Part shown: piece after piece, positions 3,867 to 53,286 of the stretch | Layout of the letters: each line of letters begins with the position of its first letter | Numbering within the stretch: position 1 is the first letter of the stretch | IMG/VR virus record: IMGVR_UViG_3300042453_005404 | Coordinates: 186,001-250,000 of that record | DNA length: 64,000 bases | Strand: one strand, 5' to 3' | Translations under genes and position numbers: made by a program | Notes under the pieces: generated by a model | The model's database searches: none | What the model saw: only the letters and a program-made list of their open reading frames with translations | Told to the model about the DNA's origin: nothing

Positions 3867-3947
3867 CAACCATACCTGATACTTATTTCTAACCATACCA
3901 AGACCATACCGAAATATATTCTTGGTGGGTTAGAAAGAGAACGTTCT

Positions 3948-4316
3948 ATGTTGTTTTTTTATCAAGGTTATTCATCTTAGATGAATAAGCCAGACGTAAA
4001 AGAAAATCTACGGCAACAGCTTACGGGTAAGACGAGCGTTGAAAGGTACGGAGAAGCAAAAGCTGCGGAAGTGAAAAGAAAGCAAAGTTTATCTCGTAAG
4101 GGAAAATATACAGGCCAAGAAAGTTCAAGGTACAAAATTTTGAAAGATATACAGTTATGTTCTCCAGACGGAATGATTTATACTAATATTGAAGGAATCA
4201 AAGAATTTGCCGAGAAGCATGGTTTATCAAAAAATCATCTTTCTGAACTTTTATCTGGAAAAAGAAAAACACACCATGGATGGCACCTAGTTAATACAAA
4301 AGGTGATAATTTATGA
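3948..4316 (+). pseudogene. internally deleted GIY-YIG-family homing endonuclease: 10-codon N-terminus, TAG, then the DNA-binding part (ORF 3981..4316)
   Basis: MLFFYQGYSS* (3948-3980) resembles MEYKYEGHSL at the start of 15417; C-terminal SPDG...FAEKHGL...LLSGK...HGW module aligns without gaps to that of 15417; no catalytic motif present. Confidence 0.65.
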
Positions 4317-4426
4317 TGGCAGAAGCTAAACAATACGTTGCAAACATTGTTAAGACTGTGTTTACCAAAAGCGATCTTGTTGATCGTGCTGCAAACGAAA
4401 TATTAGCTCTTCGCAAAAAATCTTGA
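4313..4426 (+). pseudogene. orphan second copy of the protease C-terminus (37 aa, MMAEAKQYVANIVKTVFTKSDLVDRAANEILALRKKS)
   Basis: Aligns to protease 3753-3866 (MTLSEAKIIDGETARKAFKKSDFVERAANEILSLKTK); shared EAK, KSD, RAANEIL. Confidence 0.8.
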
Positions 4427-15365: not shown

Positions 15366-15379
15366 CCTGTAAAACCTGC

Positions 15380-15407
15380 CCTCTCCCCTATATACTAGTA
15401 GGAGAGG
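15380..15407 (+). promoter_or_regulatory. hairpin sequestering the RBS of the GIY-YIG gene, with a promoter-like loop
   Basis: CCTCTCC(cc)TA-tatactag-TAGGAGAGG, ATG at 15417. Confidence 0.6.
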
Positions 15408-15416
15408 TAACGTTTT

Positions 15417-16382
15417 ATGGAATACAAATACGAAGGTCATTCACTTAAATCCGGTATCTACAAAATCACAAACAAACTAAACGGAAGAATCTATATTGGT
15501 TCTGCTAAACGTTTCAAGGAACGGTGGCAATCTCACGTTTACTCTCTGAGAAATCAAAAACACAACAATAGTTTTCTTCAAGCGGATTTTAACAAATGCG
15601 GAGAAGAAGCATTTGTGTTCGAAGTATTGGAAGTTACAGAAGGCAAAACTAAAGAAGAACGTTTGTTGATTGAAGAAGTTTATATCGGGCAATATTACGA
15701 CAAAGGTAACAGCTGCTATAATCTGTGTAGCCGAGCGATATCTAGAGAAAACACAAAAAGCAAAAACCCAGAAGAAACAAAACGCAAGATATCGGCTGCC
15801 ACAAAAAAGATGTGGCAAGACCCAGAAAAAGCGGCTAGTATACGCAGCTCTATGAAAAGTGCGCTATCAGATCCAGAGACAGCCAAGCGTCATCAAGAGG
15901 GTCGCATTCGTTCGTGGGAAAACAATCAAGAACGTCGTGCCGCTGCTTCGCAACGTATGTCAGAACGTATGACAAACAATACGGAAGAAACAGAGAAAGT
16001 TGTAGAGATTCTAAAAGCATCACAACCTAAAGGCAGAGACACTTTTAGGAAACGAATGAAAGAAGATACAGAGCTTCGACAAACTTATGTTGATATTGCA
16101 AAAAAGAAAGCTGAAAATCTAAACGAGAGATACAAGAATGATGCTGAGTATAAAGCGATGATGGATAGAAAATCTATAGAGAACATCAAAGCGTATAACG
16201 AAAAACAAGCACAAAGCATACCAGTCAAAGCTCCTTTGGTATCACCAGATGGAATAGTTTATTCAGATGTTCGCAGTTTGAATGCATTTGCCAAAGAACA
16301 TGGTTTAGATTCAAGTTCTCTTTACAAGCTTTATTCTGGCAAGCTGAACGAAGTAAAAGGTTGGAAGCTATTTATAGAATAG
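15417..16382 (+). mobile_element. free-standing GIY-YIG homing endonuclease
   Basis: SGIYKITNKLNGRIYIGSAKRFKERW, FEVLE, E, YNL; helical linker; C-terminal NUMOD1/HTH-like module. Confidence 0.9.
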
Positions 16383-16418
16383 TGTAAAATGCCCCCTCTT
16401 CACTACACAGGATAAATC

Positions 16419-49789: not shown

Positions 49790-52420
49790 ATGAAAAAAAC
49801 ATACATTCTCGACACAAACGTACTGCTCTCTGATTCGAATAGTTTGTTTGGATTCGAAGAACATGACCTTGTTCTTCCTCTGATCGTTCTTGAAGAACTT
49901 GATCGTCACAAAGATCGTCAAGATGAAGTAGGACGTAATGCCCGTGAGGTGGTGCGCAAACTCGCAGATCTTACCAAAGTAAACAAAGACTTTAAAACAG
50001 GCATCCCACTTGGAAAGAATCTAGGAACTCTAAAGATACTCTCCATCGAAGATATCTTCCCAGATCACGTTCCGCATAAACTTCCAATGGAAATGGAAAC
50101 CAAAAAGAGCGGCGATAATACCATCGCTCAGTTTTGTGTAAACTACATCGAAAAACACACAGAAGCACAAGTTGTTCTTGTTACCCGTGACACAATCCTT
50201 CGCCTAAAAGCTCAAGCTCTTGGTATCGCTTGCGAAGATTACCGCAAGTTCAATGTTGCCACATCAGTTAACTCTCTTTACTCTGGTGTAAGAACCATTG
50301 AACGTGAAGATGTAGTAGTTGCTGACTTCTACAAAAATGACGAACAGTTTTTCCTACCAGCAGACATTCAAGAAGAACTTTACCCAAACCAGTTTGTTGT
50401 ACTGAAAAATGGTCAACAATCTGCAATGGCAAGATTCTATGCCAAAGATGAACCGGTTATTCCTATCGGAGAAATCAAAAGCAAACTTCAACCAAGAAAC
50501 AAAGAACAAGAGTTTGCCCGTGAGCTACTTTTCGACGAAAATGTTAAACTTGTAACTCTTGCTGGTAAATCGGGGTGTGGGAAAGCTCAACCTTTAAATG
50601 CAAAAATATTGACTCCACACGGATGGACAACAATGGGAAAAATCCAAAAAGGAGACTATGTTGTTGGTAAAAACGGTAAACCCACAAAAGTAACTGGCGT
50701 GTTTCCTCAAGGTGTAAAACCAATATACGAGGTGGTTTTTTCTGATGGTTCAAGCACACAATGCTGCGACGATCACTTGTGGTTTACACAAACTGTTTCA
50801 AACCGCACAGCAAAAAATGTTGGAACAGTTAAATCCCTAAAAGAGATACGAAATGATCTCAAACTAAAAGATGGTCGCAATAAGCATTACATTCCAATGG
50901 TTGAATCTGTAGAATTTGAATCAAAAGAAGTTCCACTCGATCCTTATTTGCTCGGATTGTTGATCGGAGATGGAGGGTTTAGTAATCATACAGTTACCTT
51001 TACAAGTTCCGATGAACAACTTGTCAACGAAATGACTGCCAGACTACCAGAAACCTGCACTGTTTCCAAAAAAACACATAGAACATATGACTATTTGATT
51101 CACGACAAACGAAACTTGCTCGAAAAATACAATGATTCCAAACGATACGTTTTACGTTCTCCGTCAGGAGAAAAAGTTATGCTGGGATCTACGGTGTTGT
51201 TTTGTCAAAAACACAACATATCCCCTAGCGGATTAGCAAAGCTTTTAAATGGCACATTCAAACAAATAAAAGGCTGGACCGTTATAACTGGTTTAAAAAC
51301 CAAAACCGAACTAAAAAACAAAGTAGTTCTTGGTTTGGAAAGCTTGGGATTGCAAGGACATAAATCCTACGATAAATTTATCCCAGATGTTTACAAGTAT
51401 AACAACTCCAAAATACGTTTGGAAGTTTTGCAAGGGTTAATGGACACAGATGGCACTGTTTCAAAAAATGGATATGGAGTCAGCTTTTCCAGCAGCTCAG
51501 AAACTCTAGCCAAAGACGTACAAGAACTTGTTTGGTCTTTTGGTGGCAAAGCAGTCATCTCAGAAAAACAAACATCGTACACTTATAAAGGTGTTAAAAA
51601 GCAAGGCCGCCCATCATTCGTAGTGCAAATCTCAGTGCCACCAAACGTTCAACTGTTTAAACTAAACAGAAAAATTGAACGGCAAAAAGTACGTTCAAAA
51701 TATATTCCAACAAGATCTATCGAATCTATAAACCCAATAAACTTGCAAGAAGCTCAGTGTATATCTGTGGAAGACCAAGAGCATCTGTATGTCACAGATG
51801 ATTATATCGTAACACACAACACTCTTCTTGCTATCGATGCTGGGTTGGAACAAGTGCTTAATGCTCGCCGTTATCGCTCACTTGTTATTTGTCGTCCAGT
51901 AATGCCAGTAGGAAAAGATATTGGATTCCTTCCCGGCGATTTAAACGAAAAACTAGAGCCTTGGTTGGCACCTATCAAAGATAACCTACGCTTTCTTTTA
52001 GGAGCCTCAGAACCACCCAAAGAATCGTCGGGAGGCTCACGTAAAAAGAAGATCGCAGAACCAACAGCAAAGTTCGATGAACAAGTTCTGCAAAGCTATT
52101 TCGATGAAGGTATCATTGAAGTTCAAGCAATGACCTTTATTCGTGGTCGTTCTATTGCCAATGCTTACATCATTGTTGATGAAGCACAAAACACTAACCT
52201 TCATGAAATTAAGACCATTCTTACCCGTGTTGGTGAAAACACCAAGATCGTTCTTACTGGAGATCTTGAGCAAATTGATAGCACATACGTTGACTCAGTG
52301 AGCAACGGTCTTTCTATTGCCATTGAAAGATTTAAGAGCCAAAAGATCTCTGGACACGTAACCTTCCTTAAAGGGGAAAGATCGTTACTCGCTACCATCG
52401 CTTCTGAGATTTTGATCTAG
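49790..52420 (+). CDS. phoH: PIN-PhoH (PhoH2/YlaK-type) ATPase with an intein in the P-loop (start 49790)
   Basis: YILDTNVLL PIN motif; LAGKSGCGK|TLLA Walker A after splicing; IGFLPG, FIRGRS, IIVDEAQN, TRVGENTKIVLTGD. Confidence 0.92.
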   Translation: MKKTYILDTNVLLSDSNSLFGFEEHDLVLPLIVLEELDRHKDRQDEVGRNAREVVRKLADLTKVNKDFKTGIPLGKNLGTLKILSIEDIFPDHVPHKLPMEMETKKSGDNTIAQFCVNYIEKHTEAQVVLVTRDTILRLKAQALGIACEDYRKFNVATSVNSLYSGVRTIEREDVVVADFYKNDEQFFLPADIQEELYPNQFVVLKNGQQSAMARFYAKDEPVIPIGEIKSKLQPRNKEQEFARELLFDENVKLVTLAGKSGCGKAQPLNAKILTPHGWTTMGKIQKGDYVVGKNGKPTKVTGVFPQGVKPIYEVVFSDGSSTQCCDDHLWFTQTVSNRTAKNVGTVKSLKEIRNDLKLKDGRNKHYIPMVESVEFESKEVPLDPYLLGLLIGDGGFSNHTVTFTSSDEQLVNEMTARLPETCTVSKKTHRTYDYLIHDKRNLLEKYNDSKRYVLRSPSGEKVMLGSTVLFCQKHNISPSGLAKLLNGTFKQIKGWTVITGLKTKTELKNKVVLGLESLGLQGHKSYDKFIPDVYKYNNSKIRLEVLQGLMDTDGTVSKNGYGVSFSSSSETLAKDVQELVWSFGGKAVISEKQTSYTYKGVKKQGRPSFVVQISVPPNVQLFKLNRKIERQKVRSKYIPTRSIESINPINLQEAQCISVEDQEHLYVTDDYIVTHNTLLAIDAGLEQVLNARRYRSLVICRPVMPVGKDIGFLPGDLNEKLEPWLAPIKDNLRFLLGASEPPKESSGGSRKKKIAEPTAKFDEQVLQSYFDEGIIEVQAMTFIRGRSIANAYIIVDEAQNTNLHEIKTILTRVGENTKIVLTGDLEQIDSTYVDSVSNGLSIAIERFKSQKISGHVTFLKGERSLLATIASEILI
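50585..51820 (+). mobile_element. Ala-1 class-3-type intein (412 aa) with LAGLIDADG endonuclease and an extra HTH-like insert
   Basis: Starts AQPLNAKILTPHGW; DHLW (Trp), AQCISV (Cys), VTHN (Thr) then Thr+1; LGLLIGDG and LQGLMDTDG. Confidence 0.9.
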
Positions 52421-52466
52421 AAAATAGCGTTTTTCGAACTATATATTTCTTAGAGAGGTACTGTTT

Positions 52467-52553
52467 ATGGAATATAGGTTTGAAGGAAACGCTAATAAAA
52501 GTGGTGGTCCCCCTCTTCTACAAACAACACGCTCTTCACTAAACCCAGCTTGA
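52467..52553 (+). pseudogene. 28-codon remnant of the GIY-YIG family
   Basis: MEYRFEGNANKSG vs MEYKYEGHSLKSG (15417); leader CTATATA...GAGAGGTA..GTTT(T)ATGGAATA conserved at DNA level. Confidence 0.7.
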
Positions 52554-52575
52554 TCTATACTTAACTGTATAGATC

Positions 52576-53286
52576 ATGGCTGGTTTTAACCCTAACAGAA
52601 AAAAGAAAACTTATTCACTTAATCGTTCGCAGCCATCAAAGGTTATTGCAACGATTGTTGATGGAAAAGTTGAATACTTTGACGAAACGCTGGTCACGGT
52701 TGATAACCCATACTATCAACTTCAAACAGCAACAAGTCAGGGTTTACCTCCACCTCCTCCACCTCCCCCCCCAGCCGAATACGATGAAGATGTTATAGAG
52801 TTCGATTGGACAGATACCGAGGTAGCAACCTTTAACATAACGTTTTCACAAAATCCTTATCTTACACTGGAAATACTTCCAGCAGAAGGATTTGAGAACA
52901 TAGCATTTTTTGCTAACAACTTATCAACAACAGGATTTATTGCACACGTTTCTGCTCCGTTTAGTGGACAGATTGTTTATCGTGCTATTGTGTCTCCAGT
53001 ATTCCCTGTTGTTATTGAACGTGTTGTTGTTAGTAGTTCATTTTACTACACAGCTTCTGCTGGAAAGATACCAGAAAGTTCGAACTCAGAGTTTGTTGCA
53101 ACATACAATCAACTGTTTCCAGCAACATATCCAACAAACTTATTCTTTACACCAATAGATGATAACAACAATGGAGATGCTGGTGTTGCGATTGTTGCAA
53201 CTGGTTCGTTTGGTTTAACAAGTACAGAAGTAACCTATTCTGCACCAGTATATAACTCTATACACTATCTTGCAGTGAAACCTTGA
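52576..53286 (+). CDS. probable structural protein
   Basis: ORF track; poly-Pro linker; ATACTTAA motif at 52556. Confidence 0.65.
   Translation: MAGFNPNRKKKTYSLNRSQPSKVIATIVDGKVEYFDETLVTVDNPYYQLQTATSQGLPPPPPPPPPAEYDEDVIEFDWTDTEVATFNITFSQNPYLTLEILPAEGFENIAFFANNLSTTGFIAHVSAPFSGQIVYRAIVSPVFPVVIERVVVSSSFYYTASAGKIPESSNSEFVATYNQLFPATYPTNLFFTPIDDNNNGDAGVAIVATGSFGLTSTEVTYSAPVYNSIHYLAVKP

What the first reader, a model, noticed from the sequence alone, without database searches (positions are those of the whole stretch)
52439..52553. Third, nearly erased member of the same GIY-YIG family behind phoH: three decay stages in one window
Seen: CTATATATTTCTTAGAGAGGTACTGTTTATGGAATATAGGTTTGAAGG (52439) closely parallels CTATATACTAGTAGGAGAGGTAACGTTTTATGGAATACAAATACGAAGG (15388), giving MEYRFEGNANKSG vs MEYKYEGHSLKSG. 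The ORF then stops after 28 codons. It contains CCCCCTCTT (52509) and CTCTTCACTA (52532), both also found right of the intact copy (16392, 16396). The 3948 element starts MLFFYQGYSS* and keeps only the DNA-binding end. Its LQTTRSSL weakly echoes the PhoH tail LKGERSLL. Inference: intact (15417), catalytic-domain-deleted (3948) and scar (52467) copies, all directly after conserved genes.
Basis: partly seen in the sequence, partly recalled or inferred. Interest (0 to 1): 0.68.

Follow-up and report, generated by a model that had tools for sequence, protein, structure and literature searches.

The report
Homing endonuclease gene remnant behind phoH
The short stretch behind this phage's phoH gene is what is left (control region, first 13 codons and tail-end motif) of a selfish GIY-YIG homing-endonuclease gene whose body was deleted; related phages carry the intact gene, the same remnant, or nothing at this spot, so it is a clear but ordinary snapshot of how such genes are gained, decay and are lost.

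Summary
Window 52439-52521 keeps, in the right order and orientation, the 3' half of the family leader (CTATATA box, Shine-Dalgarno, ATG), 13 codons of the N-terminus, and the C-rich motif that follows family stop codons. The nuclease and DNA-binding body is gone.

- **Statistics:** a covariance model built only from 16 intact leaders hits this spot at 41.9 bits (E 8.5e-8). It is the only significant non-self hit in the 260-kb genome. The model gave no false hit in 522 kb of related DNA.
- **Relatives at the phoH-to-next-gene junction:** four states occur. These are empty, an intact endonuclease 47-79 nt after the phoH stop, the same remnant, and the remnant plus a newly inserted intact endonuclease.
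- **The 3948 element:** it is likewise a catalytic-domain-deleted copy. Relatives have an intact endonuclease or an empty site between gp21 and gp22.
- **Caveats:** the three elements belong to three subfamilies and are not copies of one element. The supposed echo of the PhoH tail is chance.

This is a T4-like "homing cycle", a known kind. The hairpin-plus-promoter leader and the flanking repeats are inferred regulatory features, not shown ones.

The parts
52421..52438 (+). Spacer right after the phoH stop; decayed 5' arm of the former leader hairpin
   Evidence: The CM aligns it to the 5' arm. The fold is no longer stable: -6.3 kcal/mol, z +0.25, against z -4.1 to -8.8 for intact leaders.
52439..52466 (+). 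Leader remnant: CTATATA box (loop / promoter-like), Shine-Dalgarno AGAGAGG (52452-52458), spacer to ATG
   Evidence: Identical in L005, L189 and L190.
52467..52505 (+). First 13 codons of a MEYRFEGN-type GIY-YIG endonuclease (ends just before the GIY motif)
   Evidence: N-terminus identical over 8 residues to P0084/P0085. 39 of 51 nt identical to intact L185/L186 genes.
52506..52521 (+). Deletion junction plus remnant of the C-rich motif that follows family stop codons
   Evidence: CCCCCTCT occurs only here and at 16392 in 260 kb. The same motif sits after the stops of L072, L073, L076, L083 and others.
52522..52575 (+). Local spacer with the promoter-like ATACTTA box (52557-52563) of the next gene
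   Evidence: 93% identical over 45 nt to the L023 spacer. The ATACTTA class is 17-fold enriched upstream of genes.
52467..52553 (+). 28-codon ORF, read as a by-product of the deletion
   Evidence: No Pfam hit. Only 10 codons in L005, and no ATG in L023.
49790..52420 (+). PIN-PhoH gene (true start MKKTY) carrying an intein at 50585-51820
   Evidence: Pfam PIN_4, PhoH, LAGLIDADG_3 and Hom_end. Boundaries from the intein-less L004 PhoH.
15366..15416 (+). Leader of the intact endonuclease: hairpin burying SD and ATG, TATACT/CTATATA box in the loop
   Evidence: -19.7 kcal/mol, z -4.1. Conserved in 16 family leaders.
15417..16382 (+). Intact 321-aa GIY-YIG homing endonuclease
   Evidence: Pfam GIY-YIG 2.7e-9. 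PHROG homing endonuclease 1e-27. 413 homologues.
16383..16408 (+). 3' repeat of the leader's 5' motif, directly after the endonuclease stop
3886..3980 (+). Leader hairpin and 10-codon stub (MLFFYQGYSS, then a stop) of a second, MLFDYQG-type endonuclease
   Evidence: Fold -21.8 kcal/mol, z -4.6. Stub matches P0063/P0066/P0071/P0086 N-termini.
3981..4316 (+). 111-aa ORF: only the C-terminal DNA-binding part of that endonuclease
   Evidence: Pfam NUMOD-like, below cut-off. Aligns to the last ~100 aa of full-length members. 64% identical to the C-terminus of the intact gp21-gp22 endonuclease in L114.
4313..4426 (+). Displaced original 3' end of gp21 (37 codons), left behind the truncated endonuclease
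   Evidence: Nearly identical to the gp21 3' end plus spacer of the empty-site relatives L106/L113.

Best explanation
Window 52439-52521 is a pseudogene scar. A free-standing GIY-YIG homing-endonuclease cassette of the MEYRFEGN subfamily once sat directly behind phoH. The cassette ran: leader with an SD-burying hairpin and a promoter-like box in its loop, then the ORF, then a C-rich 3' repeat.

An internal deletion then removed everything from codon 14 to the 3' repeat. It left the leader's 3' half, 13 codons and the 3' motif. The 5' arm of the hairpin has since mutated away. The 28-codon ORF is a by-product.

The scar is one state of a gain-decay-loss-reinvasion cycle at this junction. The window also holds an intact family member (15417) and a catalytic-domain-deleted one (3948) at two other junctions.

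Shown: homology of both cassette ends, the allelic states in relatives, and loss of the hairpin. Inferred: the order of events, the deletion mechanism (possibly short homology between codons 10-13 and the 3' repeat), promoter activity of the loop box, and translational control by the hairpin.
For: - **Leader and codons:** CM hit at 41.9 bits, E 8.5e-8, the sole significant non-self hit in the genome. No false positives in 522 kb of relatives, where every hit is an endonuclease 5' end or the L005 scar.
- **Pattern specificity:** the leader-plus-start pattern is specific to the family across 2.9 million viral contigs.
- **N-terminus:** identical to P0084/P0085, with 39 of 51 nt identical to intact L185/L186.
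- **3' motif:** unique in the genome to the two places downstream of family leaders.
- **Allelic series at phoH:** intact (L004, L104, L105, and the distant L021), intact plus scar (L005), scar (window, L189, L190), solo 5' motif (L023), empty (L006, L020, L024, L026).
- **Peptide not conserved:** the scar ORF is 28 codons here, 10 in L005, and absent in L023.
- **Hairpin:** lost in the scar and strong in intact leaders.
- **Position:** the scar ATG is 46 nt after the phoH stop. The family median is 51 nt over 30 sites.
Against: - No intact gene with exactly this leader has been found behind phoH, so the ancestor is inferred from paralogues.
- The junction cannot be resolved to the nucleotide.
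- The C-rich 3' motif is short, and related motifs occur before a few other genes.
- The leader remnant is more conserved between the window and L005 (1/48 mismatches) than the 51 nt upstream (11/51, p 0.004, post hoc). That could mean retained function rather than pure decay.
Confidence: 0.9

Rival explanations
1. Abortive or partial homing. Only the ends of a cassette were ever copied in, through template switching during break repair, so a complete endonuclease never sat at this locus in this lineage.
For: Junction duplications in L005 (41 nt of the phoH end) and at gp21 (displaced 3' end at 4313-4426) show that insertions here involve untidy, partly illegitimate repair.
Against: Both cassette ends are present in the right order. 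Intact genes sit at the same junction in several relatives. An internal deletion is the simpler route, and it is the documented one for T4 I-TevIII (PMC2790892).
Confidence: 0.07
2. Exapted element. The remnant is kept because its promoter-like box, Shine-Dalgarno and short ORF now regulate the downstream gene, or because it serves as a binding or landing site for family endonucleases.
For: 1/48 against 11/51 mismatches between the window and L005. In L005 an intact endonuclease inserted just upstream of the scar. Promoters embedded in endonuclease genes are known to favour their retention in T4 (PMC2988022).
Against: The downstream gene has its own ATACTTA box, which empty-site relatives also have. 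L023 and L006 do without the remnant. The window and L189 differ only inside scar codons 3-4. The promoter scan is inconclusive.
Confidence: 0.12
3. Chance resemblance, or a generic ribosome-binding or promoter pattern followed by a real small gene.
For: blastn-short sees only an 11-nt exact match. The 28-aa ORF has a good Shine-Dalgarno.
Against: CM E 8.5e-8 and no false hits in 0.78 Mb overall. The pattern is family-specific in the viral collection. No Pfam hit for the peptide. ORF length is not conserved.
Confidence: 0.01

Closest known systems
Free-standing GIY-YIG (Seg) homing endonucleases of T4-like phages
   Same: An N-terminal GIY-YIG domain plus a C-terminal NUMOD/helix-turn-helix DNA-binding end. 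Intergenic, co-oriented, and directly behind conserved genes. Present or absent between close relatives. Flanking sequence is co-converted (PMC2988022, PMC2330249).
   Different: A separate sequence family, typed by the MEYKYEGHSLKSGIYK N-terminus, in a distant T4-like clade whose gp21 is only 46-49% identical to any isolate. No cleavage site is known. The item at 52439 is only a remnant.
Defunct I-TevIII of T4 (internal deletion; intact in RB3)
   Same: An endonuclease inactivated by an internal deletion that persists in the genome, with an intact allele in a relative. It can be carried along by a neighbouring active endonuclease (PMC2790892).
   Different: I-TevIII is an intron-encoded HNH enzyme that keeps most of its ORF. 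Here only 13 codons remain. The 3948 element is the closer parallel.
RBS-sequestering hairpin with an internal late promoter (I-TevI/II/III, segB, Aeh1 mobE)
   Same: Intact family leaders fold into a hairpin that buries the Shine-Dalgarno and ATG. A promoter-like box sits in the loop, so only transcripts started inside the loop would be translatable (PMC2988022).
   Different: Not tested experimentally. There is no covariation support beyond shuffles. Whether the box is of early (TATACT) or late type is open. The hairpin has decayed in the scar.
PeSL cassettes (promoter-early stem-loops) of T4-type phages
   Same: A short repeated promoter-like motif flanks the mobile ORF on both sides. It recurs at several intergenic sites (6 in this genome). 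Recombination between repeats would excise or insert the ORF (PMC2839356, PMC4122927).
   Different: PeSLs are strong sigma-70 promoters plus terminator stem-loops in hyperplastic regions. Here no terminator is predicted, and the stem-loop buries an RBS inside the structural-gene block.

Membership tests
Remnant of the MEY..EG-type GIY-YIG homing-endonuclease cassette | Family leader (promoter-like box, SD, spacing to ATG) | tested here: met
   CM from 16 intact leaders: 41.9 bits, E 8.5e-8.
Remnant of the MEY..EG-type GIY-YIG homing-endonuclease cassette | Family N-terminal codons | tested here: met
   MEYRFEGN is identical to P0084/P0085. 39/51 nt identical to L185/L186.
Remnant of the MEY..EG-type GIY-YIG homing-endonuclease cassette | C-rich motif that follows family stop codons | tested here: met
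   Unique 8-mer shared with 16392. The same motif follows many family genes.
Remnant of the MEY..EG-type GIY-YIG homing-endonuclease cassette | Position about 50 nt after the stop of a co-oriented conserved gene | tested here: met
   46 nt here. Median 51 nt over 30 sites behind at least 8 different genes.
Remnant of the MEY..EG-type GIY-YIG homing-endonuclease cassette | Intact homologue at the same locus in relatives, and empty alleles | tested here: met
   Intact in L004, L005, L104 and L105; empty in L006, L020, L024 and L026.
Functional GIY-YIG homing endonuclease (Pfam PF01541) | GIY...YIG catalytic domain with Arg/Glu/Asn | tested here: not met
   The ORF ends its homology at codon 13, just before the GIY motif, and has no Pfam hit. 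The 15417 gene does meet this feature (2.7e-9).
Functional GIY-YIG homing endonuclease (Pfam PF01541) | Site-specific cleavage of endonuclease-less alleles and biased inheritance | not testable with these tools
   Needs enzyme assays or phage crosses.
T4-type hairpin/late-promoter translational control | Stable hairpin burying the SD | tested here: not met
   Scar leader z +0.25. Intact leaders z -4.1 to -8.8. No covariation in the family alignment.
T4-type hairpin/late-promoter translational control | Transcription start inside the loop | not testable with these tools
   Only motif enrichment is available. The sigma-70 scans are inconclusive.
PeSL | Repeated promoter motif flanking the mobile ORF | tested here: met
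   Direct repeats at 15366-15395 and 16383-16408, and in most family loci.
PeSL | Terminator stem-loop | tested here: not met
   No terminator-like site was found.

The most novel reading that the evidence does not exclude
The 48-nt leader remnant is not inert. It may be maintained either as a promoter and translation signal for the downstream structural gene, or as a docking site that guides re-invasion by family endonucleases. In L005 an intact endonuclease landed about 59 nt upstream and duplicated 41 nt of the phoH end. Scars would then act as landing pads that speed up the homing cycle.
Probability: 0.1. Interest if true: 0.55.

Novelty: new member of a known kind. Interest (0 to 1): 0.33.

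Why it matters
It gives a clean, multi-allele picture of the homing-endonuclease life cycle at one junction, in an uncultured, distant T4-like phage clade: empty, intact, truncated, scar, and scar plus reinvasion. It also shows a single endonuclease family colonising at least eight junctions just behind conserved genes.

For annotation, it shows that the 28-codon ORF and the 111-aa ORF are remnants, not new genes. The displaced gene ends (gp21 here, phoH in L005) mark where insertions broke the upstream gene. They are therefore testable predictions of the cleavage sites.

It does not reveal a new kind of system.

Tried and rejected
- **megablast and tblastn against isolate phages:** no nucleotide match and only distant protein matches, so there is no annotated near relative.
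- **blastn-short:** too insensitive; it saw only an 11-nt word between the scar and the endonuclease.
- **RNAalifold and hand-drawn 16-pair hairpin:** 74.7% of cells are paired, against 43-59% for slid controls. Covariation equals the shuffles, so structure conservation is not demonstrated.
- **Sigma-70 and terminator scans:** at background level.
- **PhoH-tail echo in the scar ORF:** chance.
- **CM on the 3948 leader:** not detected at E up to 10. Its homology rests on the stub peptide, a local alignment and relatives.
- **Weak CM hit at L100:13359-13448 (E 0.009):** no ATG and no family codons; judged to be chance.
- **15-nt exact match at genome 84731-84745 (minus strand):** this is the plus-strand 5' motif before another gene, not a fourth scar.
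- **Not used, because not needed:** the large representative search, structure prediction, read mapping and complex prediction.

Full report
**Context.** The window is bases 186001-250000 of a 260,466-bp IMG/VR viral contig. It covers the structural block of a distant T4-like myovirus. That block holds the portal, the gp21 prohead protease (Pfam Peptidase_S77), the scaffold and the major head protein. No isolate phage matches at the nucleotide level. The nearest gp21 proteins are 46-49% identical and come from Flavobacterium and Microcystis phages.

**Observation.** The ORF 52467-52553 has 28 codons. The resemblance to the start of the intact GIY-YIG gene at 15417 is not a generic ribosome-binding pattern, on four counts:
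- A Smith-Waterman scan of both strands of the whole genome, using the leader plus 13 codons, ranks the scar first after self. Its score is 21, against 16 for the best unrelated window.
- A covariance model built from 16 intact leaders of relatives, without the scar, hits 52411-52505 at 41.9 bits, E 8.5e-8. The next hit scores 22.7 bits.
- The same model, run over 522 kb of related loci, hits only endonuclease 5' ends and one homologous scar. Those loci include about 45 gp21 loci and about 20 phoH loci that lack endonucleases.
- A degenerate leader-plus-start pattern scanned over 2.9 million viral contigs gave nine family gene starts and that same scar.

**Relatives at the phoH junction.** I used the downstream gene and the PhoH C-terminus as handles and found an allelic series:

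| State | Loci | Detail |
|---|---|---|
| Empty | L006/L022, L020, L024/L025, L026 | 28-71 nt between phoH and the next gene |
| Intact endonuclease | L004/L018 | 317-aa family gene starts 47 nt after the phoH stop; L019 is the same arrangement without it |
| Intact endonuclease, other subfamilies | L104, L105 (MLFDYQG type); L021 (distant member) | all directly behind phoH |
| Intact plus scar | L005/L017 | 278-aa endonuclease whose last 9 codons are a second copy of the PhoH tail; a 41-nt duplication with 1 mismatch; then the same scar, here open for only 10 codons |
| Scar only | window; L189, L190 | the two metagenome contigs carry the window's 28-codon scar with two substitutions, behind an intein-less phoH |
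| Solo 5' motif | L023 | 5' motif of the leader, no SD and no ATG, then 45 nt that are 93% identical to the scar's 3' part |

**Anatomy of the family cassette.** In 30 distinct sites the endonuclease ATG lies a median 51 nt after the stop of a co-oriented upstream ORF. At least eight different upstream genes are involved.

The leader is highly conserved. It folds into a hairpin that buries the Shine-Dalgarno and the ATG. The fold is -19.7 kcal/mol (z -4.1) in the window and -27.6 kcal/mol (z -8.8) in L072. The MLFDYQG subfamily has a hairpin of different sequence that also buries the SD.

The loop holds CTATATAC/TATACT. TATACT is the -10 box of clear TTGAC-N17-TATACT promoters elsewhere in this genome. 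CTATATA and CTAnTTA boxes are 10-18-fold enriched upstream of genes. This mirrors the T4 arrangement for I-TevI/II/III, segB and Aeh1 mobE (PMC2988022). Here it is inferred only: covariation does not exceed shuffles, and the promoter scans are at background.

Nearly every family stop codon is followed by a second copy of the leader's 5' motif, so the ORF is flanked by direct repeats. This resembles PeSL cassettes (PMC2839356, PMC4122927).

**Anatomy of the scar.**
- 52421-52438 is the mutated 5' arm. The hairpin is gone (z +0.25).
- 52439-52466 is the loop box, the SD and the spacer.
- 52467-52505 is codons 1-13. MEYRFEGN is identical to intact P0084/P0085, with the same AGY serine codon. A 51-nt ungapped alignment to L185/L186 has 39 identities.
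- Homology stops exactly before the GIY motif.
- 52509-52521 is the C-rich 3' motif. Its 8-mer core occurs only here and right after the intact gene's stop in the whole genome.
- The rest is local spacer, with the next gene's own ATACTTA box.

Both cassette ends therefore survive in the right order, and the body of about 0.9 kb is missing. I conclude that the body was lost by an internal deletion. Codons 10-13 resemble the 5'/3' motif, so short-homology recombination is a plausible route, but the junction cannot be resolved.

**The other two elements.** The gene at 15417-16382 is intact (Pfam GIY-YIG 2.7e-9; 413 homologues).

The 3948 element has four features:
- It keeps a strong leader hairpin (z -4.6).
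- It has a 10-codon stub that matches the MLFDYQG N-terminus, with a 1-nt insertion and a stop.
- Its 111-aa ORF aligns only to the last ~100 residues of full-length members.
- Between gp21 and gp22, eight closer relatives have 40-70 nt of spacer. L114/L115 have an intact endonuclease there whose C-terminus is 64% identical to the 111-aa ORF.

Behind the 111-aa ORF, 4313-4426 is the displaced original 3' end of gp21. It is nearly identical to the gp21 end of the empty-site relatives. The working gp21 end resembles that of the endonuclease-bearing L114.

Together with the phoH duplication in L005, this suggests that insertions enter through breaks in the last 10-35 codons of the upstream gene and bring a replacement gene end with them. 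This is inference.

**Rivals.**
- Chance, or a real small gene, is excluded by the statistics and by the non-conserved ORF length.
- Partial (abortive) homing cannot be fully excluded. It is less simple than an internal deletion, which is documented for T4 I-TevIII (PMC2790892).
- Retained function is possible but weakly supported. The remnant is more conserved between the window and L005 than the 51 nt upstream (1/48 against 11/51 mismatches, p 0.004, post hoc). Against this, the window and L189 differ only inside scar codons 3-4, and relatives do without the remnant.
- The PhoH-tail echo is chance.

**Verdict.** The thing is a decayed free-standing GIY-YIG homing-endonuclease gene. That makes it a new member of a known kind, of modest interest as a well-resolved homing-cycle series.

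Noticed in passing
window 50585-51820 (inside phoH 49790-52420): A 412-aa intein with a LAGLIDADG homing endonuclease is inserted in the PhoH P-loop (GKSGCGK | intein | TLLA). It begins with Ala and ends THN|T, and it has the Trp/Cys/Thr pattern expected of class-3 inteins (from my own knowledge). It is absent from L004, L006, L189 and L190 and present in L005.
   Followed up: partly
window 4313-4426; L005 3826-3866: The displaced original 3' end of the upstream gene lies behind the endonuclease: 37 codons of gp21 here, and a 41-nt repeat of the phoH end in L005. These may mark the break points of insertion.
   Followed up: partly
G000:C1 23533, 35858, 70855, 84732, 201371, 202385 (last two = window 15371, 16385): The motif AAAAC-N4-CCTCT (the leader's 5' arm) recurs on the plus strand in six intergenic places just upstream of genes. 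It may be a PeSL-like regulatory repeat, or solo remnants of other cassettes.
   Followed up: partly
window 16368-16374: A CTATTTA box of the class enriched upstream of structural genes lies inside the last codons of the intact endonuclease, about 45 nt before the next gene's ATG. It could be an embedded promoter that would disfavour clean loss of the endonuclease, as described for T4 segG and mobE.
   Followed up: no
G000:C1 about 110-128 kb (e.g. 110799, 111466, 122965, 126267): Clear TTGA(C)-N17-TATACT promoters lie with their -10 box only about 12 nt before the ATG. This suggests very short or absent 5' leaders for a set of small early-type genes.
   Followed up: no
window 52740-52775 (gene 52576-53286): A run of nine prolines is encoded partly by a C8 homopolymer. 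This is a possible slippage-prone tract in the gene downstream of the scar.
   Followed up: no
L004 3619-3957; L019: Some relatives carry an extra 112-aa ORF of unknown function between phoH and the downstream gene, so this junction is a general hot spot for insertions.
   Followed up: no
L100:13359-13448 (G000:C1 151959-152048): A weak covariance-model hit (22.7 bits, E 0.009) with no ATG and no family codons. Probably chance.
   Followed up: no
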